From the IMG/VR virus record IMGVR_UViG_3300042317_001568, positions 62,001 through 126,000 of that record: a DNA stretch of 64,000 bases. The stretch is one strand, 5' to 3'. Of this stretch, positions 3,582 to 62,383 are shown piece by piece (the stretch's first letter is position 1; every line of letters starts with the position of its first letter). Under the pieces are notes generated by a model, which worked only from the letters and a program-made list of their open reading frames with translations, made no database searches and had not been told where the DNA came from. The position numbers and the translations under genes are program-made.

Positions 3582-4568
3582 ATGGCTGTTATCGCTACGC
3601 CGGTCGCCCACCCCATTGTCCAGTGCTGCGATAACGCTGCGCAGCCTGTTTTGACGCCAGTCACTTGCGCGGGACAAAACGTGCTCAGCGCCGTTGTTTC
3701 AACTGTGAACGGCCAGCCGGTCACAGGACGCATGCAGTCAATCTCAATTACACAAGGCCAGTGCGCTACGATTGAGTGGCAGATGCGCGATCAGTCTGGC
3801 GTGCCGGTTAACTTATCTGCATGTTCCGCGACGCCGTTCGCCATCGTGTTACGGTTAAAAGAGCAACTGTCGTGGGGAAACGTCAATTCGCCGCTTGAGG
3901 TTGCCGGCACTATTGCCGCTGCCGCAACCGGAAAAGTAACCGCGCAGCTTACGGCTGGAATGGTAGCTACGCCGGGTATTTACTACGCCGAATTTGCGTT
4001 AATTAATGTGCCGGCGCAAGCGCAAAACCAGCCGTGCGTTGTGTTTTCGAACACCTTTCATTTAATCATTAACCGCAGCAATTTTAACGGCGGCGCGGAA
4101 ATGGGCGGGCCCCCAAGTATCGCTGAAGTTCGTTTACACCTGCGCGACTCCAATCCCGGCGAAAGTTTTCTGCTCGACCGACTGATGTTTGACGACGCCG
4201 AAATCGCCCTCGCTATTACGCGTCCGGTGCAGTATTGGAACGAGATTCCGCCGCCGTTGGACCGCATTTACAACACACAAAATTTCCCGTTCCGCTATCA
4301 CTGGTTAGAAGGCATCTGCGCTAATCTGTTTTTGATGGTGGCTGAGCAGTTTCGCCGTAACCAGTTTAATTACTCTGCCGGCGGTCTTTCCGTAGACGAT
4401 CAAAACAAAGAAGGCGCTTACGAGCGTGCCGGCCAAACACGGTGGCAGGCTTATCGGGAGTGGGTGCGGGCGACAAAAGCCAGCATTAACCTTGAAAGCT
4501 GCTACGGCGAAGTTACGTCAAACTATAAGTACAGCGCCTACACCGACGCGATCCGAATTCGCTATTAG
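3582..4568 (+). CDS. Putative neck/head-tail adaptor protein with N-terminal beta-sandwich domain
   Basis: Position after the capsid genes; helical C-terminal region (EVRLHLRD...FDDAEIALA) typical of adaptor proteins. Confidence 0.55.
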   Translation: MAVIATPVAHPIVQCCDNAAQPVLTPVTCAGQNVLSAVVSTVNGQPVTGRMQSISITQGQCATIEWQMRDQSGVPVNLSACSATPFAIVLRLKEQLSWGNVNSPLEVAGTIAAAATGKVTAQLTAGMVATPGIYYAEFALINVPAQAQNQPCVVFSNTFHLIINRSNFNGGAEMGGPPSIAEVRLHLRDSNPGESFLLDRLMFDDAEIALAITRPVQYWNEIPPPLDRIYNTQNFPFRYHWLEGICANLFLMVAEQFRRNQFNYSAGGLSVDDQNKEGAYERAGQTRWQAYREWVRATKASINLESCYGEVTSNYKYSAYTDAIRIRY

Positions 4569-4692
4569 CGCATTCTAGAATCTGGAAAATGCGTCGTAAG
4601 TGCTTTGTTCCCTAGCACTTTCGCAATTCGCGAATTTGGAATATGGCGCTTGTCCGCAGTTCGCGAACCGTGGACAGCTGCGCGGACACTGG

Positions 4693-4721
4693 CTAAATAT
4701 GTTGCAAATTTGTGGCATATT
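4693..4721 (+). promoter_or_regulatory. Promoter-like motif CTAAAT-N17-CATATT, copy 1
   Basis: Identical boxes and spacing recur at 5465-5493 and 49079-49107. Confidence 0.75.
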
Positions 4722-4766
4722 TAACGTGGTTCCGATTACCTATGCCCACTAAAAAAGGGAGTTTCT

Positions 4767-5399
4767 GTGCTGGCTGTAAATCCACCAACCCAGATGTTGC
4801 TGCAGTACTTGGAGCATTGTCGCGACAATAGCGACGGCGTGTTCACTGATCCCGCGCTGCATCCGTACTTTATGTCGCTCGCCGTCGCGAAAGCCGTCGG
4901 CATGGACCACACCACTGAAGAGTATAAAGAGCGTGCGTTGTCGACGCTCGCGAATTGGTCGCGGATGCTGTGCGGACAGCTGACCAGCGTATCTATGCGG
5001 GAAATCGCTGACTGCGGCAAGTTCGCGCAGGACAGCGGTGACCGCAAAGGCGAGAAAATGGCCAAAGACCTGCTCGACTCGATGCCGCTGATTCAGGCTG
5101 TTTTCAAGTCGTGGGACGCTGCGGTTGACCACGAGCACATCGCGGAGTGGATTTATGAAGACGGCGTACGTCGGGAGAAGGAAGGGACTGCGCCCCATAT
5201 TTCGAATGAGTTTGTTGCAAAAGAGAAGAAGAAGCTCGACGACCTCTTCGAATTAATTCAAAAGAAGCTCGGAGAGCTCGATGGCTCTGGCCCGCAGCCC
5301 GAGGAGGTCAAATCTCCCGAGCCGGCGCGTCCACCAGTGACGCCGGCCGACATCATGAAGATGCTGTTCGATAACGCCAAGAAGCCGTCTGCGAACTAA
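4767..5399 (+). CDS. Hypothetical protein (cassette A cargo)
   Basis: 210 aa, GTG start after an AAGGGAG RBS; has its own promoter motif and terminator. Confidence 0.7.
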   Translation: MLAVNPPTQMLLQYLEHCRDNSDGVFTDPALHPYFMSLAVAKAVGMDHTTEEYKERALSTLANWSRMLCGQLTSVSMREIADCGKFAQDSGDRKGEKMAKDLLDSMPLIQAVFKSWDAAVDHEHIAEWIYEDGVRREKEGTAPHISNEFVAKEKKKLDDLFELIQKKLGELDGSGPQPEEVKSPEPARPPVTPADIMKMLFDNAKKPSAN

Positions 5400-5412
5400 G
5401 TTCAACGCGGCG

Positions 5413-5457
5413 AGAAGGAGCGGGCACCAAAACCGGTGCTCGCTTTTTCTTAGCTAT
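5413..5457 (+). terminator. Intrinsic terminator followed by TTAGCTAT
   Basis: agaaggagcgggcacc-aaaacc-ggtgctcgctttttct. Confidence 0.75.
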
Positions 5458-5464
5458 CGGTGAC

Positions 5465-5493
5465 CTAAATTAGGCGCGATTTTGCGTCATATT
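5465..5493 (+). promoter_or_regulatory. Promoter-like motif CTAAAT-N17-CATATT, copy 2
   Basis: Repeated motif upstream of the AAA+ gene. Confidence 0.75.
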
Positions 5494-5529
5494 ATTTGTG
5501 TCCCCGTTTCCGCTATGAAGGAGCTTGCG

Positions 5530-6369
5530 ATGAGTATTGCAGACGGAGTGTGCGATCTTCTGCCCGGCTATTTCGCTCGACGAGGCGAGGCCCTGCTGGC
5601 CAGATGGATGCACGAGGCCCGCGGGAAGGAACCGCGCGGTGGTTTACTGGTCGGCCCGCCCGGCACCGGCAAGACGTTCTTTGCCGACGCGTTCGCCCGC
5701 GGCCGCAAGGCCGAGCAGGTGTTTATTCCGTGCCACCCGTGGCTCACGAATGAGGAGCTACATCAGGGTGTGGACATCGGCCGCGTGGCGGTCGGGGTCG
5801 AGCACGCCGACGAGGCGTACATCGACGGCCAGCTGCTGCGCGCTGTGCGCATGTCGCACGACTGCGACGTGGTTATCACGTTGGACGAGGTCGAAAAGGC
5901 TGGGTCGCGGTTTTACCCGCTTATCCTCGACTTCTTGCAGAATGGTCGGGTGCCTGATGCCCGCCACAAGCTGCACAGCGGCAACACGGCCCGGATGTTT
6001 ATCGTCCTGACCGCGAACGAAGAGGTTGACCTGCCCGAGGCCATTAAACGGCGCTGCTTTCGGGTAAACATGGGCTTTCTGCCCGAGCATGTCGAAACCG
6101 ATGTGCTGCGCAAGCAGACAGGCGCACCGGGAGGGGCCTGTCGCATCATTGTGCGCATGGCGAACGCAATCCGGCAGAACGGCGACTCCAAGCCGTCCCT
6201 GCAGGAGCTTCGTCACTTGCTTATGGCGCGAGACCTGTGCGTAAGCACGGACGACGTAGCCACTTTGATCGAAGCGTTTCTTGTAAAAGAAACCAAGGAC
6301 ACGGAGGCCCTTAAACAGGCATTCAGCAAACCCGAAGCTGTACTGTTCGGGGAGTTCAAAAGGAAGTAA
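5530..6369 (+). CDS. AAA+ ATPase, MoxR/AAA_5-like
   Basis: Walker A GPPGTGKT, Walker B ITLDEVEK, sensor I LTAN, Arg finger EAIKRRC; AAGGAG RBS favours ATG 5530. Confidence 0.85.
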   Translation: MSIADGVCDLLPGYFARRGEALLARWMHEARGKEPRGGLLVGPPGTGKTFFADAFARGRKAEQVFIPCHPWLTNEELHQGVDIGRVAVGVEHADEAYIDGQLLRAVRMSHDCDVVITLDEVEKAGSRFYPLILDFLQNGRVPDARHKLHSGNTARMFIVLTANEEVDLPEAIKRRCFRVNMGFLPEHVETDVLRKQTGAPGGACRIIVRMANAIRQNGDSKPSLQELRHLLMARDLCVSTDDVATLIEAFLVKETKDTEALKQAFSKPEAVLFGEFKRK

Positions 6370-6371
6370 CC

Positions 6372-7781
6372 ATGAGCCTGACACTGCGGAAGTTGCAGCG
6401 AATGCTGTCGAAGTCCGTGAAAACTACCCGCGATGTTAGGTTTACGGACCCGCGAGAGCGGGCAGAGTTCGCGGAGTTTATCAAGGGCGTATACGCCGAA
6501 GAATTTACGAGCCCGCTTCTTCGACAAGGGCACGTTCGCGAGAACTGCCCGTGCGGTAATTGCGGCCCCAAAACCGTGAACAACATCACGGCGCTTATTG
6601 ACCGGTTGACAAAGCGGCACGGCCATCGTGCCACACTCAGCCAGTTGCTGGAGCCCAGAAATAAGTCTGGGCGGGCTCAAGGCGGTAGCGGTAAATCAAA
6701 CGGAGCACCGCAGGAGGAGCCCCAGCAGGCACCTTCTGGCGGGTTTGATCCTCCGCCCGCCAAAGATACGGCCGCGGAACCACCGCAGCCCGAGAACTGG
6801 GAACCAACTCCCGCCGCCCAAGAAACTCCAAAACCAAAAACTGAGCGTGAAAGGCTTTCCGACGAGGAAAAAGATTTACGTGCGCGGTTAAAGGAATTGG
6901 AGAAGCAGAAAGCCGCCGCGAAAGCACGCGGCAGTCTGCAAGCTTCGGCGATAGATGTTGTGATAAAGAAAGCCAGAAAGCAGCTGAAGGACGCCCGGAA
7001 ACAGGCATCTAAAATCAGCGGCGTTGCTGGTATTGAGAGTGCTCCGTCGTTGGAGGCTCGACGACGCGCAGCCGGCACACATGGCCGCCTGCGGGTCGTT
7101 CCGCCTCAACTGCGGAACAAAACAGCGGAACTCATTAATAAGTTAGTGCATGAAAGCGGCGCAGCTGGTGACCGCCTCACGCCTATCCCAATTTTGAGTG
7201 CGCGAAAAGTTGTCAAGAGGATGCTTGTCCGGCGTCCACTTGGTAACGCGTTTAAGGAGGACAGCAACGCCGGTCGTCCCGTCACGCTGTTCTTGCCCGA
7301 CGTCTCGCCGTCTTGCGCCCGACAGGCTCAAGCGGCGTGTGACGTCGCTAATGCGGCAGGGTACGCTGGAGTCTCTGGCTCTGACGTACTGGTTTTCCCA
7401 CACTCTAACGGAGAGGTGGAGGAAGATTACGTGCCGTGGTTTAACGGTCGACCCAACTTGGCAAACTTGACGAAAACAGAAGCGCTGTTTTCCGAGATAA
7501 CAAGCGGTCGGTCGCGGTATAACATCCGGATAGTAGTCGCCATTGGCGACCACGACGCCGCGGAGTTGTATCGAGAAATCGCGGCGCTAAAAAAAGTGGT
7601 GCGATTAGTGTGGTTGCACAATATTCCAGTGAGTCGTCGTCGACCCACGGTTGTGCCGTCTGACGCCAATAACTTGTACGGCGAGAATTGGACAGCTGAA
7701 ACACGCAACAAGGTCACAATGATCTACGGTTGCGTTGATCAGGCGTCTATTCTCGGCGGGCTAGAACTGGCTCTTTCTTAA
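6372..7781 (+). CDS. vWA-domain partner of the MoxR-type ATPase
   Basis: MIDAS-like DVSPS and VVAIGD; Pro/Glu/Gly-rich linker; begins 2 nt after the ATPase stop. Confidence 0.65.
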   Translation: MSLTLRKLQRMLSKSVKTTRDVRFTDPRERAEFAEFIKGVYAEEFTSPLLRQGHVRENCPCGNCGPKTVNNITALIDRLTKRHGHRATLSQLLEPRNKSGRAQGGSGKSNGAPQEEPQQAPSGGFDPPPAKDTAAEPPQPENWEPTPAAQETPKPKTERERLSDEEKDLRARLKELEKQKAAAKARGSLQASAIDVVIKKARKQLKDARKQASKISGVAGIESAPSLEARRRAAGTHGRLRVVPPQLRNKTAELINKLVHESGAAGDRLTPIPILSARKVVKRMLVRRPLGNAFKEDSNAGRPVTLFLPDVSPSCARQAQAACDVANAAGYAGVSGSDVLVFPHSNGEVEEDYVPWFNGRPNLANLTKTEALFSEITSGRSRYNIRIVVAIGDHDAAELYREIAALKKVVRLVWLHNIPVSRRRPTVVPSDANNLYGENWTAETRNKVTMIYGCVDQASILGGLELALS

Positions 7782-7836
7782 GCGCGCACCATTAACAGCG
7801 GCACTCCGTTTTACGCCGCAGGAGGTAATTTATGCA

Positions 7837-8411
7837 CTGGCCTAGATAAAGCGATGCCCGGGGTAATCAGCCCGGAGCCTTCGTCTGCAGGGATTAATTG
7901 TTTTCCATGTAGCCGAAATAAAGGGACGACAAACAAACACGGGTTCTTGAAGGCTCGTGAGGACAAAAGTCGTAAACATAGCGGAGCTGTGTCCGACGCT
8001 TTGAGGGGACAATGGCAGGTTAGTCCCACAGGGGAGACACGAGACTTTATTGCGGAACGTCGCCTAATAGCGAAACGCCGCGACATCGTTTCGGTCAAAC
8101 CAGACCGGCCCCGGATTTTGTAACGCGGTTTGCTGCCTAGAAGCGGCCGCGCATATCCCCTGTCGAAAGCGCGCTCGATGGGGGGTCGCTCAATCTGGGA
8201 CTTTTCGTCTGTGCGAAGGTCACGCGGGCCGTCGTGCCCGCGGAATATCACAGAACTATACTAACACGCGCTATTCGTCTAGTCCGGGTAGCGTAGGCTT
8301 TCTCGGTGCGCCTGCTTTAAGCGGTTGCCGCCACGTTCGGCGAGCACTGAGCCACTTCCGCTGAGCAATTGGCGGAGGGGGGAATCGAAATGGCCCCTTT
8401 GGGGCCGTTTC
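7837..8411 (+). ncRNA. Large structured non-coding RNA candidate, family unassigned
   Basis: Long-range closing helix 7837-7853/8269-8287 and at least 10 nested helices; wobble pairs read as G-U on the + strand; no credible CDS. Confidence 0.7.
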
Positions 8412-8420
8412 TTTAGCTAT
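8387..8420 (+). terminator. Intrinsic terminator followed by TTAGCTAT
   Basis: gaaatggcccc-ttt-ggggccgtttc-ttt. Confidence 0.75.
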
Positions 8421-8443
8421 CAGCGCTCCAGTAGAATAATGGT

Positions 8444-9673
8444 ATGACGTACCAAAAAACTTTTCCGTTCCGCCGTGTTTCCGTGGATCACATGGTCCGC
8501 GGAACAACCCGGGTTTGGTGGCAACTTGAGCCGCTATTCCGCGATCCCGGGCCGCATGTCTACCAGCTGCAAGTCAGCAAATCTGGTTTAACAAACTCTT
8601 CAGACTGGGCCGATGTCGGGCCGCCGTTAACAAACGCTTATGTGGCGTATGACTCGGCGTGGCGACTATCCGGATATTCCCTGCTTACGCATTATCGCGT
8701 TAAATTAACAACGCCAACAACTGTCTATGTCTCGCAATCTGCAGGTTGCTTTGGCGAGTTAAACGAGCGCGACTGGGTGTTGTCGCAAGAAATTATCCGT
8801 AAAGAACAGCTACGGCATCAATTTGTGTCGACGCCCGGGTATCTTATTAAGGCTATGCGTTTCGGAAAGCCGTGCCCGCGCTGCCGAGAAAAGCTGACGC
8901 AGGAAGTACTCGACTCGTATTGCCCGGTCTGTAGCGGCACTGGTTTTGAGGTCGGCTATTTTCCGCCGCAGCCGTTGCAATGCTGGGATTTATCTTTACA
9001 GACAATTCAAGAAGAAGGCGATGCGCAGGCCCGCGGGCCCACACGCGACAACGCCGTTGTCCAAGCACGCGTAATTGGTTTTCCGGCTTTAAATAAATAT
9101 GACGTGTGGGTAAACGCCGCCAGCGACGAACGCTGGATAATTGACACAATTCAAGTTGTCGCGGCTATGAGGAATGTGCCGCTGGTGTATCAGGTGCAGT
9201 TAAACCTCGCGCCGTTTACAGACGGTATTTACACATTTGAAGTCGGCGGAGAGTCGCCCACGCGCGACCCGTCGACAGAAGGCCCTACTGTTGGGTGCGG
9301 CGATGTCATCTTAAACCATAACTACAACGGCAACGATCGGTACGCCTACCTGTCTCCGACGGGGTGCCCAATCAGCGGCGCTACGGTATACGTGTTTAAC
9401 AGAAACGTATATGACGTAAACGGCCCGCAAATTGCCCGGACTATGGCGCTCGCAAAAACGAGCACAACCGCAAACGGCCGCTGGGTGCAGGGCGTTAATG
9501 TAAATCCCGGCAACTACGCTATTCTTTATGAAAAGACTGGCGAGTTCGGCCCAGACGTAGATTTTGTAACTGTGGTTGCGCCACCGCCTACCGCATCTGT
9601 TAAAACAGCGACACCCGCAAAGAGCGCCCCGACATGGCCGACGAAAAAAGAAAACGACTTCTGGACCATATAA
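8444..9673 (+). CDS. Putative head-closure/neck protein with CxxC...CxxC insert and C-terminal beta-sandwich
   Basis: CPRC...CPVCSGTGF; lies between the adaptor and tail-completion genes. Confidence 0.55.
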   Translation: MTYQKTFPFRRVSVDHMVRGTTRVWWQLEPLFRDPGPHVYQLQVSKSGLTNSSDWADVGPPLTNAYVAYDSAWRLSGYSLLTHYRVKLTTPTTVYVSQSAGCFGELNERDWVLSQEIIRKEQLRHQFVSTPGYLIKAMRFGKPCPRCREKLTQEVLDSYCPVCSGTGFEVGYFPPQPLQCWDLSLQTIQEEGDAQARGPTRDNAVVQARVIGFPALNKYDVWVNAASDERWIIDTIQVVAAMRNVPLVYQVQLNLAPFTDGIYTFEVGGESPTRDPSTEGPTVGCGDVILNHNYNGNDRYAYLSPTGCPISGATVYVFNRNVYDVNGPQIARTMALAKTSTTANGRWVQGVNVNPGNYAILYEKTGEFGPDVDFVTVVAPPPTASVKTATPAKSAPTWPTKKENDFWTI

Positions 9674-49078: not shown

Positions 49079-49107
49079 CTAAATTTTTCGCAATTTCGCG
49101 GCATATT
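49079..49107 (+). promoter_or_regulatory. Promoter-like motif CTAAAT-N17-CATATT, copy 3
   Basis: Repeated motif. Confidence 0.75.
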
Positions 49108-49154
49108 AGATGCCCCGCTATCTCATTATCAGCGGGTCACTCTGGAGACGCGAA

Positions 49155-49601
49155 ATGGCTGCAACTGCGACTATAAGGGATTTTGTCGTATCTGAAGACG
49201 TGGTAGAACACGTCAAGGCGCGTATCAAACACCATCTGCGACATCGGCAGAAGCGGGGTGTACCGAAGACGAGTCAGACGCTGGTGGACCGCGTCATGGC
49301 TAAATACGACGCGGCGTTTCCAGACAAGTTCTGGCATCGCGTCGGATTGTGGTACACCAAGATCATGGAACGGACGCTTCCAAAAATGCGCGGGTTTGCC
49401 GCCACTGATTTCTTTGAGATTGTTGCGGCGCACCTCCGCAACAACGAAGACTACGATGGTTTTCAGGACCCACCTGACGACATCGAACAGCGCGTCCAAC
49501 GTGACGCATATGTCGCCTGCACTGCGGGCATTAGGGACTACACTTATGACGATGACATCGACACGTTCGATGATGACGGACCTAGCCACGATTCGTGGTA
49601 A
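49155..49601 (+). CDS. Hypothetical protein (cassette C cargo)
   Basis: GGAG RBS before ATG 49155; acidic C-terminal tail. Confidence 0.65.
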   Translation: MAATATIRDFVVSEDVVEHVKARIKHHLRHRQKRGVPKTSQTLVDRVMAKYDAAFPDKFWHRVGLWYTKIMERTLPKMRGFAATDFFEIVAAHLRNNEDYDGFQDPPDDIEQRVQRDAYVACTAGIRDYTYDDDIDTFDDDGPSHDSW

Positions 49602-49702
49602 AACATGCACGGCTATGCAGTCGTAACAATCTACGCAGATTGTTTCGACTCGTAGTCGTGCTAAATTTTGCTATTGCCACTTTCCCTTAGCTATTACAAC
49701 TT

Positions 49703-52268: not shown

Positions 52269-53453
52269 TCAGGCGTTGTCAGCCTGCGCGAGCTCGTAAA
52301 GTTTTTCCAGCGGAAGCATGTCGCTGGCGGCTTTGGTCTGCACAACCGCGGCGATCTTCTTTTCCTGCATGAGGCGATCCAGCATGCCGGCCATACCGCG
52401 GTCAAGCGTCGGCACAATGGCCGCAATCTTATCGCGGTCCATGTAAACACCGCCGGACGAGACAGCGTCGGCGAAGTCGTCACCGAGCCAGTTGCGCACT
52501 TCTTCAACAGCAAGCTTTTCGAGGTCGTCGATGGCGTACACATTGCCCGTTGTCGTTTCGACGTTATTTGACATAAAGTCGCGGGCGGCTTTTTCCGTCA
52601 CGGCAAAAAGAATTTCTTCCGGACGCTCAAGCCCGCCGGAGCCGTAGAGGCGCTCAAGCTTGTTCTCGCGGTCGAACGCGTCAACCGCTGCCGCAATCTT
52701 GAGCCGCATATCCTGAGTTCTCGCGGCGTCCGGATTGGCGTCAACAGCGCTCGCCAGCTTGGACAGTTCTTGCCCGGCAGCGGCGTTGCTCCGACGGACA
52801 AGCGCCGCCCGCTCACGCAGCATCTCGCCGGCTACCTTGGCGGCACAGGCGCCGTAACCAGCCGACAGAGACAGCATATGCACCTGCTCGTTAATGTCGG
52901 CATTATACGCCGCGGCCTTTTCGAGAATCTTGTTGGCGATCACATGTCGGTCTGTGAATACAAACTCGTCGCGGAACTTCTCAAAGTGCGCGGCAGCAAA
53001 CTTCACTTCCGGTGCATTCCGAAGGGGCCAGTGCCGGTCTTTGCTGCCGTTTTCGGCAACCCAGACAATGGCGAAATCAGCGTCGTTCAGCTCGTCCACG
53101 CCCCGTGTTTGGTCCGCAGCTGCCTTCTTCTCTACGGCGTAGACCTGCCCAAGAATGCCGAAATATTGCGCGGAATCGTGTATCCTAGTCCTGATAGCCG
53201 ATGCGTCAGCCGGTTTAAACTCGGCGGCTTTGTCGGCAAAGTACACGGCAGACAGCCACGTCGCTGCGGCTGTATGGCACGGATATAGTTTGTTAAGAGG
53301 GTCGGCGTACAGGTGTCGCGGCATTTCGCTGTTCGGGGCCCGCTGCGCTTCCGAGGCGTTCTTTACAAAATCGGGCGGCGCGAATAGAGTCGTTAAACGA
53401 TGTGTCTCCCGACCACTTACGTCGTGAACATGATCCAGCGGAATTGTGCTCAT
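52269..53453 (-). CDS. Hypothetical Ala-rich protein, possibly an internal head protein
   Basis: 394 aa; two similar segments (LYPCHT...SAVYF / HWPLRN...AAAHF); many K-x-A motifs. Confidence 0.6.
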   Translation of the reverse strand: MSTIPLDHVHDVSGRETHRLTTLFAPPDFVKNASEAQRAPNSEMPRHLYADPLNKLYPCHTAAATWLSAVYFADKAAEFKPADASAIRTRIHDSAQYFGILGQVYAVEKKAAADQTRGVDELNDADFAIVWVAENGSKDRHWPLRNAPEVKFAAAHFEKFRDEFVFTDRHVIANKILEKAAAYNADINEQVHMLSLSAGYGACAAKVAGEMLRERAALVRRSNAAAGQELSKLASAVDANPDAARTQDMRLKIAAAVDAFDRENKLERLYGSGGLERPEEILFAVTEKAARDFMSNNVETTTGNVYAIDDLEKLAVEEVRNWLGDDFADAVSSGGVYMDRDKIAAIVPTLDRGMAGMLDRLMQEKKIAAVVQTKAASDMLPLEKLYELAQADNA

Positions 53454-57998: not shown

Positions 57999-58071
57999 GC
58001 CGGTGTAGCTCAGTTGGTAGAGCCGCTGATTTGTAATCAGCAGGTCGTCGGTTCGAGTCCGACCGCCGGCT
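57999..58071 (+). tRNA. trnT: tRNA-Thr(UGU), CCA not encoded
   Basis: GCCGGTG/CGCCGGC acceptor stem; D arm GCTC-AGTTGGTA-GAGC; anticodon arm GCTGA-TTTGTAA-TCAGC; T arm GTCGG-TTCGAGT-CCGAC. Confidence 0.95.
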
Positions 58072-60367: not shown

Positions 60368-62383
60368 TCACGGCATGTTAAAAAAGCGATCGTCCATATC
60401 GGCTGAATCCCAATCCGCCTGCTGACCCTCCACCGACCGCTGCGCCATTCGGGTCAAACCCGCTAATTGCGCAAAGTTCGGCCACGAATCGGTTATGTGC
60501 CATGCCGCGGCAGCGCCAATATTTACAGCCTGCGCAAAGTCGTCGGTAAGTAACGTATTGCGCGTAATCGTGTAGATGTCACTCCCGAGGCGCGAATCGG
60601 TCTTATTTTCAACGAGCGCCAGAAAGTCAGAGACAAGACCCGGCGAATCCTGAGACGACCAGTCATATTGGAAGAAGCGTATTTGCTTCAGTTTGATCGC
60701 TTGGCACGTGTACAGCAATGAACGTGTTTTATCTAGACTGTAGTGAGCGCGGTGATTGATTGGCGTAGGCGGTTTGTACACAAGTAGGTCTTGAGCAGCA
60801 GACCTAACAAGCCGCACGGCCAATACGCGATCGAGGTTGAAACCGGCTTGCACCATAACGGTTTCGCGCACGGTTCCGGCACCCGTGTAGTCGTGAGCAA
60901 CAAAATCGCAGTTGAAGTGACTCGACCACCTCATGCACTCAACAGCCTCAGCAAGATGATCGCCACCGATAAGCAATCTTTTCGCCCACAACACGTCGAT
61001 AGTGCCGTCATGTCTGAACCCGAGAACGGCAAGTACGGTGAAGCTAATGCCTTCTTCACCGCCACCGCCCCAGTCGATTGCCAGTATTCTATGTCGGTAA
61101 TGCTCAAGATTTGCCGTACATTCTGGCAAGGGTTCTTTTTTGTTTTCCCACGGTAACAAGCACGCGGCTTTTAGCTCTGTCTCGCTGATAAGCTTTTGCC
61201 CTGTGTCGACGCTCTCGCCCATGACTTCGTTGTAGAACTGGGCCTGCGTCATGTTGCCATAACCTTCACGCTTCAAAAGCAGTGTAGCCCATTTCTCTGC
61301 GTCGGAAAAATGAAGCGGCAGGATCATCTGCGGAACATGATATCCAGCAAAGCGCCATCGGCGTTCTGGAAATCTGTGCACCCAACGACCATGCCGTGGA
61401 GTAATAGCTTTCCGACATTTCGCACACACTGTGCCCGGCTGCTTTTCGCTAATGTGAATGTTATATTCGCCTATCATCGCGTCGAGATCGTATTCCAACG
61501 ACGGGATGTTCCACTTACCGCAAGAGAGGCATGGAATAAACCATTCGGCCTGCGACGAACGCTTATACAGGCCATAAATTAAATTGTCGAGCGTCTTCGG
61601 GGTCCCGGTGTAGTACATAGTCCCCCATTTGGAGTACGACATAGTTTCCTGAATAATAGGAATATGGTCGGGGTCCATGTCCTGCACTTCGTCGATGCAC
61701 ACCCGGTCCGCGGAGACACCACGAACACGATCTGAGTCCATCAGCGCGAAACTGAACAACATCATCGAATTGTTCTTGAACGAACGCTGAAGCACTGAGT
61801 TCTCTGTGCTCGTGCCTGACCACAGCGCCTTCACAGGCGACTGGTCAATAAAAGGTCGAACATAGTTGTTGCTGAACCGCCGTATCTGTTCGTACAGCGG
61901 AGTGACAAATAACGTTTTGAAAAACGGCACCGAGTTGGCAAACACAACTCCGTGTGCTGCAAGCGATGTGGATTTCGATACCTGCCTCCCCGTGCACCAG
62001 ACCTGATTTTTCGGCATAAGGCAACGAAAAAGTGGGCTGAACGGGTAATGATTAGTTAAACCATACGGTTTGCCGTTAAGGTTTAGAACTAATGGGAGTA
62101 TCGGTTCCAACGACGGAAACGCGCGATTCTTTGCCAGAGCCTGTAGAACAGCAGATCGCTCCAGCACTGATTTGCGGTCAGTGAGGTCGATTGACAGCAA
62201 GTCTTGTAGCAGCGTCTGAACTCCAGCGTTTGGAATTTCAGCGGCTGCGTATTCCTGCGGGGATTGATCCCGCTTAATTTCTGGTGACATATGCGCAATA
62301 ATACTCGAAAAAGTTCGCCACGTCGCCGTTATCCAGCCAGCAGTCCCAAACCAGAACTGCAATGGCTTGAAGACGGAGTCCAC
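60368..62383 (-). CDS. terL: Terminase large subunit (gpA-like)
   Basis: Walker A GRQVSKST; Walker B VCIDEVQD; GTPK; Zn ribbon CLSC...CAKC; nuclease LAIDWG...DD; start may be ATG 62290. Confidence 0.85.
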   Translation of the reverse strand: MDSVFKPLQFWFGTAGWITATWRTFSSIIAHMSPEIKRDQSPQEYAAAEIPNAGVQTLLQDLLSIDLTDRKSVLERSAVLQALAKNRAFPSLEPILPLVLNLNGKPYGLTNHYPFSPLFRCLMPKNQVWCTGRQVSKSTSLAAHGVVFANSVPFFKTLFVTPLYEQIRRFSNNYVRPFIDQSPVKALWSGTSTENSVLQRSFKNNSMMLFSFALMDSDRVRGVSADRVCIDEVQDMDPDHIPIIQETMSYSKWGTMYYTGTPKTLDNLIYGLYKRSSQAEWFIPCLSCGKWNIPSLEYDLDAMIGEYNIHISEKQPGTVCAKCRKAITPRHGRWVHRFPERRWRFAGYHVPQMILPLHFSDAEKWATLLLKREGYGNMTQAQFYNEVMGESVDTGQKLISETELKAACLLPWENKKEPLPECTANLEHYRHRILAIDWGGGGEEGISFTVLAVLGFRHDGTIDVLWAKRLLIGGDHLAEAVECMRWSSHFNCDFVAHDYTGAGTVRETVMVQAGFNLDRVLAVRLVRSAAQDLLVYKPPTPINHRAHYSLDKTRSLLYTCQAIKLKQIRFFQYDWSSQDSPGLVSDFLALVENKTDSRLGSDIYTITRNTLLTDDFAQAVNIGAAAAWHITDSWPNFAQLAGLTRMAQRSVEGQQADWDSADMDDRFFNMP

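What the first reader, a model, noticed from the sequence alone, without database searches (positions are those of the whole stretch)
4692..8420. Tandem self-contained cassettes bounded by CTAAAT-N17-CATATT and hairpin+TTAGCTAT, inserted between two neck genes
Seen: cassette A (4693-5457) and cassette B (5465-8420) each begin with the same bipartite motif, with a GC(A/G)A(A/T)TT core in the spacer, and end in a terminator immediately followed by TTAGCTAT. Cassette B starts 7 nt after A ends. The ends form a short inverted pair (CTAA...TTAG). Non-structural cargo interrupts the putative adaptor and head-closure genes. Known analogy: repeated early-promoter stem-loop cassettes promote modular shuffling in T4-type phages. 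Inference: portable expression modules, with TTAGCTAT as a recombination or protein-binding boundary.
Basis: partly seen in the sequence, partly recalled or inferred. Interest (0 to 1): 0.75.

Follow-up and report, generated by a model that had tools for sequence, protein, structure and literature searches.

The report
Promoter-and-terminator-bounded phage gene cassettes
Two self-contained transcription units carrying accessory genes and a large structured RNA fill a variable slot between two conserved virion genes of a 205-kb lake phage, framed by a promoter and a terminator-plus-box signal that the whole phage group reuses, much like the PeSL regulatory cassettes of T4-type phages.

Summary
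CTAAAT-N17-CATATT (P) occurs 7 times in the 205-kb genome against 0.005 expected, always on the gene strand. TTAGCTAT (T-box) occurs 9 times against 1.3 expected, and almost always directly abuts a hairpin plus T-run. Both signals are conserved across a clade of about 190-205 kb freshwater phages that encode their own fused beta/beta' RNA polymerase. The site between the adaptor-like gene (3582-4568) and the neck-like gene (8444-9673) is a hypervariable slot. It is empty in about 20 relatives. In the others it holds at least six unrelated cargo sets, always opening with P and closing with terminator, T-box, a TATAAT-like box and 6 nt before the start codon. One cassette in a relative's slot is 84% identical in DNA to a cassette in another phage's early region, and the homology stops at the T-box. 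However, A and B are co-inherited and are one operon in two relatives. Several motif sites are syntenically conserved, and most variable genes lack the motifs. The cargo is a helical protein, a MoxR-type ATPase, a VWA protein and an undescribed structured RNA of about 0.55 kb. Verdict: a PeSL/moron-like regulatory grammar, a new variant of a known kind.

The parts
3582..4568 (+). Left flank gene L (328 aa), a conserved virion gene, probably a head-to-tail adaptor with an N-terminal beta-sandwich
   Evidence: 49 homologous loci found. The AlphaFold model's top Foldseek hit is the adaptor chain of a portal-adaptor complex, 8gtd_M, E 2.8e-5. There is no Pfam or PHROG hit.
4569..4692 (+). Spacer after L containing a hairpin (about 4599-4619), conserved in the A+B clade
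   Evidence: Read directly from the sequence. Shared blocks appear in the left junctions of L010, L013, L020, L021 and L044.
4693..4721 (+). Promoter-like signal P of unit A (CTAAAT-N17-CATATT)
   Evidence: Exact match. It is 1 of 7 copies in the genome against 0.005 expected. It fits the 54-site consensus.
4767..5399 (+). Gene A (210 aa): all-helical protein of unknown function with a conserved C-terminal PSAN tail
   Evidence: ORF with a GGGAG Shine-Dalgarno sequence. No family hits. Alignment A4 of 7 homologues.
5418..5449 (+). Intrinsic terminator of unit A (hairpin plus T-run)
   Evidence: The upstream 48 nt fold at -24.5 kcal/mol, followed by a T-run.
5450..5457 (+). T-box (TTAGCTAT) closing unit A. 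Together with P at 5465 it forms a composite terminator/T-box/promoter element.
   Evidence: The same composite sits between A and B1 in L002, L010 and L020 but is absent in L021 and L044.
5465..5493 (+). Promoter-like signal P of unit B
   Evidence: Exact match.
5530..6369 (+). Gene B1 (279 aa): MoxR-type AAA+ ATPase (AAA_5)
   Evidence: Pfam AAA_5, E 3.7e-13. The best full-length PDB relative is NorQ.
6372..7781 (+). Gene B2 (469 aa): N-terminal Cys-containing domain, low-complexity and coiled-coil linker, and C-terminal VWA/MIDAS domain (DVSPS)
   Evidence: Alignment A2. The model's top fold hit is the NorD VWA domain in the NorQ-NorD complex, prob 0.94, E 1.4e-3, followed by Rea1 MIDAS and integrin I domains.
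7821..7850 (+). Strong Shine-Dalgarno sequence (AGGAGG) plus a mini-ORF of 3-5 codons (MHWPR here; MPFP in most relatives) at the head of the non-coding tail
   Evidence: Conserved in all 7 relatives, with synonymous third-position changes.
7870..8360 (+). Conserved structured RNA region (at least 8 helices) inside unit B. No known family.
   Evidence: RNAalifold gives 84 pairs, 44 of them with changes on both sides. 28 well-paired covarying pairs against 2-5 in slid controls. z-score -3.9. No Rfam hit at E up to 10. Covered by a metatranscriptome contig. 1-2 nt indels in a 92%-identical relative.
8392..8412 (+). Intrinsic terminator of unit B (GC hairpin plus T-run)
   Evidence: dG -20.4.
8413..8426 (+). 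T-box in extended form (TTAGCTATCAGCGC), closing unit B and the whole insert
   Evidence: Present at the right edge of the insert in nearly all filled relatives.
8432..8437 (+). -10-like hexamer TAGAAT, 6 nt before the ATG of R. Probable restart promoter giving a leaderless or near-leaderless R mRNA.
   Evidence: A TATAAT/TACAAT/CATAAT/TAGAAT hexamer sits 4-7 nt before the ATG in most of the filled relatives whose R start abuts the T-box (in L021, L034, L039 and probably L033 the -10-like hexamer lies about 19-70 nt upstream), and is absent from empty sites. This arrangement is unique in this genome.
8444..9673 (+). Right flank gene R (409 aa), a conserved virion gene, possibly T4 gp13/14-like neck protein with a C-terminal beta-sandwich
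   Evidence: Adjacent to L in about 20 relatives. Weak structural similarity to a T4_neck-protein cluster, and a weak CarboxypepD_reg match.
49079..49694 (+). Third unit of the same kind: P 49079-49107, ORF 49155-49601 (148 aa), T-box 49687-49694, 8 nt before the next gene's ATG
   Evidence: The same arrangement is conserved at the syntenic site of two complete relatives.

Best explanation
The region is a hypervariable expression slot between two conserved connector genes. In this phage it holds one accessory module: helical protein A, a MoxR-type AAA+ ATPase, a VWA/MIDAS protein and a structured RNA of about 0.55 kb. The module is written as two transcription units. Each unit starts at a clade-specific promoter, P (CTAAAT-N17-CATATT, part of a 34-nt consensus). 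Each ends at an intrinsic terminator that is immediately followed by a conserved box (TTAGCTAT, often continued as YAGCG). P and terminator/T-box are the standard punctuation of one class of transcription units in this whole phage clade. That class is probably the early units. There are about ten per genome, all co-oriented with the genes. They are clustered in the ORFan- and tRNA-rich left arm and scattered singly inside late modules. Functionally, the cassette is transcribed on its own schedule and is insulated from the late operon it interrupts. A TATAAT-like box placed 6 nt before the ATG of the downstream gene then restarts that gene. In evolution, the short conserved signals frame a slot in which cargo is gained, lost and swapped. 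They also offer portable homology, as PeSLs do in T4-type phages. What is shown: motif enrichment and strandedness; hairpin/T-run association; conservation across diverged genomes; empty and filled sites; cargo turnover; one cassette shared between two genomic contexts with a homology edge at the T-box. What is inferred: promoter and terminator activity, timing, which polymerase reads P, what binds the T-box, and that recombination uses the motifs.
For: Enrichment: P 7 copies against 0.005 expected, T-box 9 against 1.34, extended T-box 5 against 0, all on the gene strand. Terminator association: 35 of 46 unique TTAGCTAT contexts follow a hairpin (dG -8 or lower) plus T-run, against 4% of random positions. 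Pairing: 7 of the 10 P (or near-P) sites in this genome are followed by a T-box; the other three are two internal tandem sites in one unit and the P at 4369. Conservation: the motifs are kept at syntenic sites in two complete relatives whose proteins are 30-75% identical, and in outgroup genomes with about 40% identical L protein and 10% lower GC. Specificity: an IMG/VR-wide scan for the T-box/P composite gives 43 true composites, all in this phage group, and 44 chance hits in AT-rich contigs that lack the rest of the consensus. Slot: L and R are 2-61 bp apart in about 20 relatives. Elsewhere there are inserts of 0.6-4.4 kb with at least 6 unrelated cargo sets. In nearly all of them P lies within 0-180 nt of the L stop codon and a terminator/T-box/-10 element precedes the R start. 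The AAA gene is absent from 5 complete relatives. Transfer: 388 nt of the third cassette in L002's slot are 84% identical to G3's early region, ending at TTAGCTATCAGC. The L034 cargo is 71-73% identical in protein to a gene in G5's tRNA region. Composite turnover: the internal T-box/P composite between A and B1 is present in 4 lineages and absent in 3. Cargo bias: 11 of 15 genes inside P...T units are absent from both complete relatives, against 67 of 223 outside (odds ratio 6.4, p 0.001). Transcription: a metatranscriptome contig from a 92%-identical relative covers 5949-8352 at depth 18, while L and A are uncovered and R is weakly covered. Literature: PeSL features are described in PMC2839356 and PMC4122927.
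Against: There are no transcription start or end data. The single RNA-library contig has no direction and could in principle be DNA. P is a poor match to TTGACA/TATAAT (2 of 6 and 4 of 6), and a generic sigma-70 scan does not call it. The T-box lies downstream of the termination point, so a role in termination is not obvious. It occurs without P downstream in 5 of 9 sites and without a clear hairpin in 2 of 9. A, B1 and B2 are always inherited together. A tree of L+R proteins fits one ancient origin of the slot followed by losses about as well as repeated insertion. The L038 deletion endpoints do not sit at the motif edges. Most accessory genes have no motifs. Only one cassette shows a homology edge at the T-box.
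Confidence: 0.7

Rival explanations
1. P and the terminator/T-box are the start and stop signals of the phage's own multisubunit RNA polymerase (the fused beta/beta'-N protein plus beta'-C). That enzyme may be delivered with the virion, as in the early transcription of phiKZ-like or N4-like phages. On this reading the cassettes form an orthogonal, host-independent expression system. This refines the best explanation and competes with the host-polymerase reading below.
For: The genome encodes a 1467-aa beta/beta'-N fusion and a beta'-C protein just upstream of the structural genes. It has no Sigma70_r2 domain and no T7-type polymerase. P carries far more information than ordinary sigma-70 promoters: it has invariant hexamers, a spacer CAAAA, GG before the -10, and TG after it. 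It is kept unchanged in relatives with 10% different GC content and only about 40% identical structural proteins, which suggests a co-inherited reader. Genomes G007 and G010 have both the polymerase and 7-9 P sites, and G009 shows neither. A review states that every polymerase-encoding jumbo phage has a conserved AT-rich motif near -10 of its early operons (PMC7598289).
Against: P has classic -35/-10 geometry (17-nt spacer, A at -11 and T at -7), unlike known jumbo-phage polymerase promoters. G006 has the polymerase but no exact P. Only one polymerase set was found, and nothing shows that it is packaged. There is no biochemical evidence.
Confidence: 0.35
2. P is a strong early promoter read by the host's primary-sigma holoenzyme, exactly as in T4-type PeSLs. 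The odd -35 would reflect an unusual host or a helper factor that replaces -35 recognition (MotA-like). The T-run plus T-box would then be an AT-rich upstream (UP-like) or activator element for whatever promoter follows, not part of the terminator.
For: The spacing is 17 nt, the -10 keeps A-11 and T-7, and G at -14 is conserved. When P follows a T-box, the box ends 7-12 nt upstream of the -35, which puts the T-run and box at about -40 to -60. At the R junction the box lies 9-14 nt upstream of a near-consensus TATAAT. PeSLs also have an AT-rich stretch upstream of the -35.
Against: The -35 matches TTGACA at only 2 of 6 positions, yet it is invariant. The T-box is rigidly fixed to the T-run (0 nt apart) but variably spaced from downstream elements. 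Three T-boxes are followed within 4-10 nt by a start codon with no -10 in between. Half of the P sites have no T-box upstream.
Confidence: 0.3
3. The cassettes are discrete mobile elements moved by site-specific recombination or homing. TTAGCTAT and CTAAAT would be their ends.
For: The insert edges coincide with the motifs in every filled relative. One cassette is found in two genomic contexts with an edge at the T-box. TAGCTA is a palindrome, and about 40% of P sites extend to AGCTAAAT, sharing the AGCTA core with the T-box.
Against: No tyrosine or serine recombinase is encoded. No target-site duplication is seen. The inverted match is only 4 nt. The left edge of the shared L002/G3 segment lies at the Shine-Dalgarno sequence, not at P. 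Cargo varies gene by gene inside a constant frame (L033 compared with L034 and L039). A+B is inherited vertically. Motif sites with conserved cargo exist at syntenic positions. The L038 deletion is not motif-precise.
Confidence: 0.08
4. The T-box is an oriented roadblock site, analogous to the stoperators of mycobacteriophage L5. A phage DNA-binding protein would sit just past the terminators of these units and block read-through into neighbouring late genes.
For: The box is an asymmetric 8-14 bp site, always in one orientation relative to transcription, always intergenic, and dispersed through the genome at the ends of units. It is the best-conserved DNA in otherwise diverged inserts: about 40 nt at 90% identity. 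The comparison with stoperators rests on my own knowledge of the L5 literature, not on a tool result.
Against: No candidate binding protein has been identified. A strong intrinsic terminator already precedes the box. The phage shows no sign of lysogeny.
Confidence: 0.2

Closest known systems
PeSLs (promoter-early stem-loops) of T4-type phages (Arbiol et al. 2010, PMC2839356; Comeau et al. 2014, PMC4122927)
   Same: Both are short composite intergenic elements: a stem-loop terminator, an AT-rich stretch and a promoter with -35/-10 geometry. Both are repeated through the genome in one orientation and lie preferentially next to ORFans. Both have occasional copies inside virion modules beside genes of unknown function. 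Both are associated with insertion, deletion and replacement of the genes between them.
   Different: The phage lineage is different: a freshwater clade of about 200 kb with its own multisubunit polymerase, whose capsid protein is only 27% identical to any isolate. The consensus is not the sigma-70 consensus. There are about 10 copies per genome rather than about 50. There is an extra invariant box (TTAGCTAT) between the terminator and the promoter. The terminator/T-box half also occurs alone at unit ends. Mini-circles and promoter or terminator activity have not been shown here.
Morons of lambdoid phages (HK97/HK022-type: a gene with its own promoter and terminator inserted between two genes that are adjacent in relatives; from my own knowledge of Juhala, Hendrix and colleagues)
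   Same: Accessory genes with their own promoter-like and terminator signals lie between two structural genes that abut in many relatives.
   Different: The phage is lytic-looking and jumbo, not a prophage. The signals are a phage-wide consensus rather than host-like ad hoc signals. The same slot is reused by many cargo sets. Base composition is only mildly different (56.7% against 53.7% GC).
MoxR AAA+ / VWA pairs (NorQ-NorD, CbbQ-CbbO, RavA-ViaA)
   Same: B1 is an AAA_5 ATPase whose best solved relative is NorQ. B2 ends in a VWA/MIDAS domain with a DxSxS motif whose best fold match is NorD bound to NorQ. The two genes are adjacent and co-oriented.
   Different: This pair is phage-encoded and always accompanied by the small helical protein A and a structured RNA of about 0.55 kb. 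B2 has a novel N-terminal domain and a long low-complexity linker. The client is unknown.
Early promoters of polymerase-encoding jumbo phages (phiKZ, AR9; review PMC7598289)
   Same: A highly conserved, phage-specific, AT-rich motif lies upstream of a set of presumed early operons in a phage that encodes a multisubunit polymerase.
   Different: The motif here is bipartite with sigma-70-like spacing. Only one polymerase gene set was found. The beta and beta'-N parts are fused rather than split.

Membership tests
PeSL (T4-type mobile regulatory cassette) | Composite intergenic element containing a promoter with -35/-10 boxes plus a stem-loop that can terminate transcription | tested here: met
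   T-box/P composites lie directly after hairpin plus T-run at genome positions 14930, 15571, 17331 and 67450 (= window 5450), and in 43 IMG/VR instances. Activity has not been assayed.
PeSL (T4-type mobile regulatory cassette) | Promoter identical or near-identical to the host sigma-70 consensus | tested here: not met
   CTAAAT matches TTGACA at 2 of 6 positions and CATATT matches TATAAT at 4 of 6. A generic sigma-70 scan does not report it.
PeSL (T4-type mobile regulatory cassette) | AT-rich stretch upstream of the -35 | tested here: met
   The T-run plus TTAGCTAT lies 7-12 nt upstream of CTAAAT in the composites. It is absent at the P sites that stand alone.
PeSL (T4-type mobile regulatory cassette) | Dozens of copies, concentrated in hyperplastic regions next to ORFans | tested here: inconclusive
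   There are only about 10 P and 9 T-box sites per genome. They are enriched next to accessory genes (11 of 15 against 67 of 223) and clustered at 14.9-19.6 kb, but most ORFans have none.
PeSL (T4-type mobile regulatory cassette) | Recombination between copies causes indels or replacements and yields mini-circles | tested here: inconclusive
   One cassette is shared between a slot and an early region, with its homology edge at the T-box. The composite between A and B1 comes and goes. Circles could not be sought, because the runs are held only as contigs.
PeSL (T4-type mobile regulatory cassette) | Host genome is a T4-like myovirus | tested here: not met
   No DNA match to any deposited phage. 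The capsid protein is 27% identical to Salmonella phage Arash and Vibrio phage D69. The genome encodes its own multisubunit polymerase.
Moron | Gene(s) present between two genes that are adjacent in related phages | tested here: met
   L and R are 2-61 bp apart in about 20 relatives, against a 3.9-kb insert here.
Moron | Own promoter and own terminator, expressed independently of the surrounding operon | tested here: inconclusive
   The sequence signals are present. One RNA-library contig covers unit B but not L or A. Direction and transcript ends are unknown.
Moron | Base composition unlike the neighbours | tested here: not met
   The insert is 56.7% GC against 53.7% for the window. Only B1 (61%) stands out.
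MoxR-VWA pair (NorQ/NorD-like) | AAA+ ATPase of the MoxR/AAA_5 type | tested here: met
   Pfam AAA_5, E 3.7e-13. A profile against the PDB matches NorQ over residues 33-271.
MoxR-VWA pair (NorQ/NorD-like) | Adjacent partner with a VWA domain carrying a MIDAS motif | tested here: met
   DVSPS is invariant in 7 homologues. The C-terminal alpha/beta model best matches the NorD VWA domain, then Rea1 MIDAS and integrin I domains. Scores are modest: E 1.4e-3, pLDDT 65-85. No Pfam hit.
Any Rfam family (for the RNA at 7870-8360) | Match to a curated covariance model | tested here: not met
   No hit at the gathering threshold over the window, and none at E up to 10 over 7700-8460.
Site-specific mobile element (integron cassette or transposon-like) | Cognate recombinase and defined recombination ends or target duplication | tested here: not met
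   No Phage_integrase or Resolvase domain in the genome. No duplication at the junctions. The ends share only 4 nt in inverted orientation.

The most novel reading that the evidence does not exclude
P and the terminator/T-box are the dedicated start and stop signals of the clade's own fused beta/beta' RNA polymerase. Any gene framed by them would then be expressed independently of the host and could move between phages of the clade. Cassette B would carry a new class of large structured RNA that works with a MoxR-VWA remodelling machine and its small partner A.
Probability: 0.2. Interest if true: 0.8.

Novelty: new variant of a known kind. Interest (0 to 1): 0.55.

Why it matters
It extends the PeSL idea, that short conserved promoter/terminator composites both regulate and shuffle accessory genes, from T4-type phages to an unrelated, uncultivated clade of freshwater jumbo phages. 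The grammar is new and unusually rigid, and its reader may be the phage's own polymerase. It gives a clean natural experiment: one slot between two connector genes that is empty in some relatives and filled with at least six different cargo sets in others. It supplies ready-made sequence handles (P, T-box) for annotating early units in metagenomic phage genomes. It also points to an undescribed structured RNA of about 0.55 kb linked to a MoxR-VWA pair.

Tried and rejected
- Megablast of 12 kb against deposited phages: no match.
- Rfam at the gathering threshold and at E up to 10: nothing except one tRNA.
- Generic sigma-70/terminator scan: calls neither P nor the two + strand terminators, so it is uninformative for this grammar.
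- Single-protein locus searches with R and B1: found only near-identical contigs.
- An alignment-based search added six distant AAA-VWA modules in contigs of about 40 kb. These have no motifs and no RNA, so the motifs do not belong to the cargo.
- The metagenome scan added almost nothing usable.
- A loose DNA pattern for the RNA core gave only chance hits and wasted a scan.
- Covariance model R1 found the RNA only in A+B-clade genomes.
- The sequence profile of B2 against the PDB, and the Atlas search for A, were uninformative.
- TTAGCTAT as a general late promoter: rejected, because 20-kb structural regions of empty-site relatives contain none.
- TTAGCT as a -35 box for the R promoter: rejected, because the spacing to the -10 varies from 11 to 16 nt.
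- Leaderless TATAAT-N6-ATG as a genome-wide class: rejected, because it is unique to the R junction.
- The CTAA/TTAG inverted pair as element ends: rejected as too short, and no recombinase is encoded.
- An apparent break in B1 of L013 was an artefact of my ORF picker. The frame is intact.

Full report
CONTEXT. The window is bases 62,001-126,000 of a single 205,010-bp viral contig with 53.8% GC. Almost all genes lie on the + strand. It comes from lake-water metagenomes and is present at full length in many lake runs. It has no DNA match among deposited phages. Its capsid protein is only 27% identical to the nearest isolates, Salmonella phage Arash and Vibrio phage D69. The phage encodes its own multisubunit RNA polymerase. 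One gene is a 1467-aa fusion of beta with the N-terminal half of beta'. A separate gene encodes the C-terminal half of beta'. Both lie just upstream of the structural block. No Sigma70_r2 domain, no T7-type polymerase, no integrase and no resolvase were found.

CTAAAT-N17-CATATT (called P here) is at 4693-4721 and 5465-5493. TTAGCTAT (called the T-box) is at 5450-5457 and 8413-8420. Each T-box directly follows a hairpin plus T-run (dG -24.5 and -20.4 kcal/mol). A third unit of the same design lies at 49079-49694. Across the genome, P occurs 7 times on the + strand and never on the - strand, against 0.005 expected per strand. TTAGCTAT occurs 9 times on + and 2 on -, against 1.34 expected. The extended form TTAGCTAT[CT]AGCG occurs 5 times, against none in 200 simulated genomes. 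Pooling 54 unique sites from this genome and its relatives gives a 34-nt consensus for P: gCTAAATa...g.CAAAA.cc.GGCATATt.a.TG. Pooling 60 T-box sites gives T-run, TTAG(C/A)TAT, CAGCG. Of 46 unique TTAGCTAT contexts, 35 sit right after a strong hairpin and T-run, against 4% of random positions.

THE MOTIFS ARE A CLADE-WIDE REGULATORY GRAMMAR. Two complete relatives were fetched (G003 and G005, collinear with this genome, proteins mostly 30-80% identical). They carry 7 and 4 P sites and 8 and 7 T-boxes, all on the gene strand. Several sit at the same syntenic places as here. These are the site after the glycosyltransferase gene, the ORFan/tRNA-rich cluster at 15-20 kb, the unit at window 49079-49694, and the unit near genome position 175 kb. 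A scan of all IMG/VR for the composite T-box, 7-12 nt, then P returned 87 hits. Forty-three carry the full extended consensus. All of these are in contigs of 45-61% GC, those I cross-checked by contig name belong to this phage group, including outgroup genomes whose L protein is only about 40% identical. The other 44 hits are in unrelated AT-rich contigs and lack every additional consensus feature. P is therefore a conserved promoter-type signal, and terminator plus T-box is a conserved unit-end signal. In this genome, 7 of the 10 P (or near-P) sites are followed 0.6-3 kb downstream by a T-box; the remaining three are two internal tandem sites within one unit and the P at 4369.

THE SITE IS A HYPERVARIABLE SLOT. 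Forty-nine related loci were recovered with the left flank protein. In about 20 of them L and R are separated by only 2-61 bp, and neither motif occurs anywhere in the 20-kb locus. The others carry inserts of 0.6 to 4.4 kb with at least six unrelated cargo sets. In nearly every filled site the insert opens with P, sometimes overlapping the stop codon of L. It closes with hairpin, T-run, TTAGCTATCAGCG, 9-14 nt, and a TATAAT-like hexamer, which in most of them lies 4-7 nt before the ATG of R (in L021, L034, L039 and probably L033 the hexamer lies further upstream). That last arrangement looks like a restart promoter producing a leaderless R message. It is found nowhere else in this genome. Five complete relatives with an empty site lack the AAA gene altogether. 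A tree of L+R proteins places filled slots in the basal clades and in the A+B clade. The empty state forms one clade of 12 plus one nested case, L038. The 22-bp spacer of L038 keeps the first bases of its sister's P and the last bases before R. It is therefore a deletion of a filled slot, but its endpoints are not at the motif edges.

EVIDENCE FOR PORTABILITY. Relative L002 has a third cassette at the right end of its slot. A stretch of 388 nt is 84% identical in DNA to a segment of G003's early region. It runs from the Shine-Dalgarno sequence through the gene and terminator to TTAGCTATCAGC. G003 has an empty L|R site, and the flanking core genes of these lineages are only about 70% identical in protein. 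The homology stops just after the T-box. The single cargo gene of L034/L035 is 71-73% identical in protein to a gene in the tRNA region of G005, where no motifs are present. A cargo gene of L030 resembles the gene behind the first P of G003 and G005. Within the A+B clade, the composite terminator/T-box/P between A and B1 is present in the window, L002, L010 and L020. It is reduced to a bare terminator in L013 and absent in L021 and L044, where A and B1 are 23-55 nt apart in one operon. The composite itself therefore comes and goes. Genes inside P...T units are enriched for accessory genes (11 of 15 absent from both complete relatives, against 67 of 223 elsewhere; p 0.001). Even so, 67 of the 78 genome-specific ORFs lie outside such units.

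A, B1 and B2 always occur together and track the phage phylogeny. 'Two tandem cassettes' is therefore the local transcriptional layout of one inherited module, not two independent mobile units. Cargo differences among L033, L034 and L039 are gene-wise inside a constant P...T frame. No recombinase is encoded and there are no target duplications. The CTAA/TTAG 'inverted pair' is only 4 nt. About 40% of P sites do extend to AGCTAAAT, sharing the AGCTA core with the T-box, and this remains unexplained.

THE CARGO. A (210 aa) is helical, has no detectable relatives outside the clade, and ends in an invariant PSAN tail. B1 is a MoxR-type AAA+ ATPase: Pfam AAA_5, with NorQ as its best solved relative. 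B2 ends in a VWA/MIDAS domain. It has an invariant DVSPS motif, and its best fold match is the NorD VWA domain bound to NorQ, followed by Rea1 MIDAS and integrin I domains. Distant AAA-VWA pairs occur in unrelated viral contigs of about 40 kb without the motifs.

THE NON-CODING TAIL. The last 630 nt of unit B are non-coding. A 92%-identical relative differs there by ten 1-2 nt indels. This tail is nevertheless conserved in blocks in all seven distinct A+B relatives, even though their B2 proteins are only about 40% identical. It opens with AGGAGG and a mini-ORF of 3-5 codons (MPFP in most relatives), which shows synonymous variation. It then forms at least eight helices. RNAalifold predicts 84 pairs, 44 of them with changes on both sides. 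Twenty-eight well-paired covarying pairs are found, against 2-5 when partners are slid by 1-3 columns. The folding z-score is -3.9. Two caveats apply: the structure was derived from the same seven sequences, and the sample is small. No Rfam family matches even at E 10. A covariance model of its core finds it only in A+B-clade genomes.

TRANSCRIPTION EVIDENCE. One freshwater metatranscriptome holds a 2396-nt contig of a close relative. It covers 5949-8352 at depth 18 and ends just before the unit-B terminator. L and A are uncovered and R is only weakly covered. This fits a separately and more strongly expressed unit B that includes the RNA. However, contigs have no direction and a single library is thin evidence.

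MECHANISM AND COMPARISON. The best reading is a PeSL/moron-like system. A clade-specific promoter and a terminator-plus-box frame self-contained, probably early, transcription units. The same short conserved signals mark and probably assist the exchange of accessory genes. The definition of PeSLs in the literature fits in architecture and genomic behaviour. That definition is a strong early promoter, an AT-rich upstream stretch and a stem-loop terminator. PeSLs lie mostly beside ORFans in hyperplastic regions, with a few inside virion modules, and they mediate indels and mini-circles. The system here differs in promoter consensus, copy number, phage lineage, and the presence of the invariant T-box.

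OPEN QUESTIONS. Who reads P is unresolved. It could be host holoenzyme or the phage's own polymerase. Favouring the phage polymerase are the rigidity of P and its conservation across GC-divergent relatives, together with the literature rule that polymerase-encoding jumbo phages have a conserved early-operon motif. What the T-box does is also unresolved. It could be part of a polymerase-specific stop signal, an oriented roadblock or binding site, or an upstream element for the next promoter. Both questions need experiments.

Noticed in passing
window 7821-8412: The non-coding tail of unit B is a conserved structured RNA of about 0.55 kb, with at least 8 helices showing compensatory changes and a folding z-score of -3.9. 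It is preceded by a strong Shine-Dalgarno sequence and a mini-ORF of 3-5 codons (MPFP in most relatives). No Rfam match even at E 10. It is found only together with the A/MoxR/VWA genes.
   Followed up: partly
outside the window: L055:7108-11511 and L055:12474-14384 (genome 47108-51511 and 52474-54384): The phage encodes a multisubunit RNA polymerase in an unusual layout: beta fused to the N-terminal half of beta' in one 1467-aa protein, and beta'-C as a separate protein. Only one set was found. It is conserved at 50-76% identity in relatives.
   Followed up: partly
window 8432-8446 and the same junction in L002, L013, L020, L022, L026, L030, L033, L044: Wherever the slot is filled, gene R is preceded by a TATAAT-like hexamer, in most relatives 4-7 nt before its ATG and with no Shine-Dalgarno sequence, suggesting a leaderless mRNA. 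Empty-site relatives lack this arrangement.
   Followed up: partly
window 5388-5399 (C-terminus of gene A) and alignment A4: Protein A is poorly conserved overall (20-31% identity) but ends in an invariant P-S-x-N tail. This might be a recognition tag for the neighbouring AAA+ ATPase.
   Followed up: no
L002:14895-15403 and the reverse complement of G003, 102301-102682: A small Cys-rich gene (129 aa) with its terminator and T-box is 84% identical in DNA between the structural-module slot of one phage and the early region of another. This is a recent cassette transfer.
   Followed up: yes
window 8462 (loose end in DNA run X2): The same lake sample holds a contig of a relative with the empty L|R junction (the L006-type spacer ending in CAAATAAACA before ATG). 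Filled and empty alleles therefore coexist in one community.
   Followed up: no
genome 5.5-13 kb, 33.4 kb, 120 kb and 146.5 kb (L053, L054, window 57999-58071, L058): Many tRNA-like sequences sit in intergenic gaps of the left arm and elsewhere. Only the tRNA-Thr at window 57999-58071 was formally called.
   Followed up: no
P sites generally, e.g. genome 4365-4374 and 14944-14953: About 40% of P sites read AGCTAAAT, so they share the palindromic core TAGCTA/AGCTA with the T-box. At genome position 4365 the reverse-strand T-box overlaps the -35 box of P. A common reader for both boxes is possible.
   Followed up: no
window 52269-53453 and 60368-62383, minus strand: Two long minus-strand ORFs (394 and 671 aa) lie in an otherwise single-strand genome. 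Whether they are genes was not checked.
   Followed up: no
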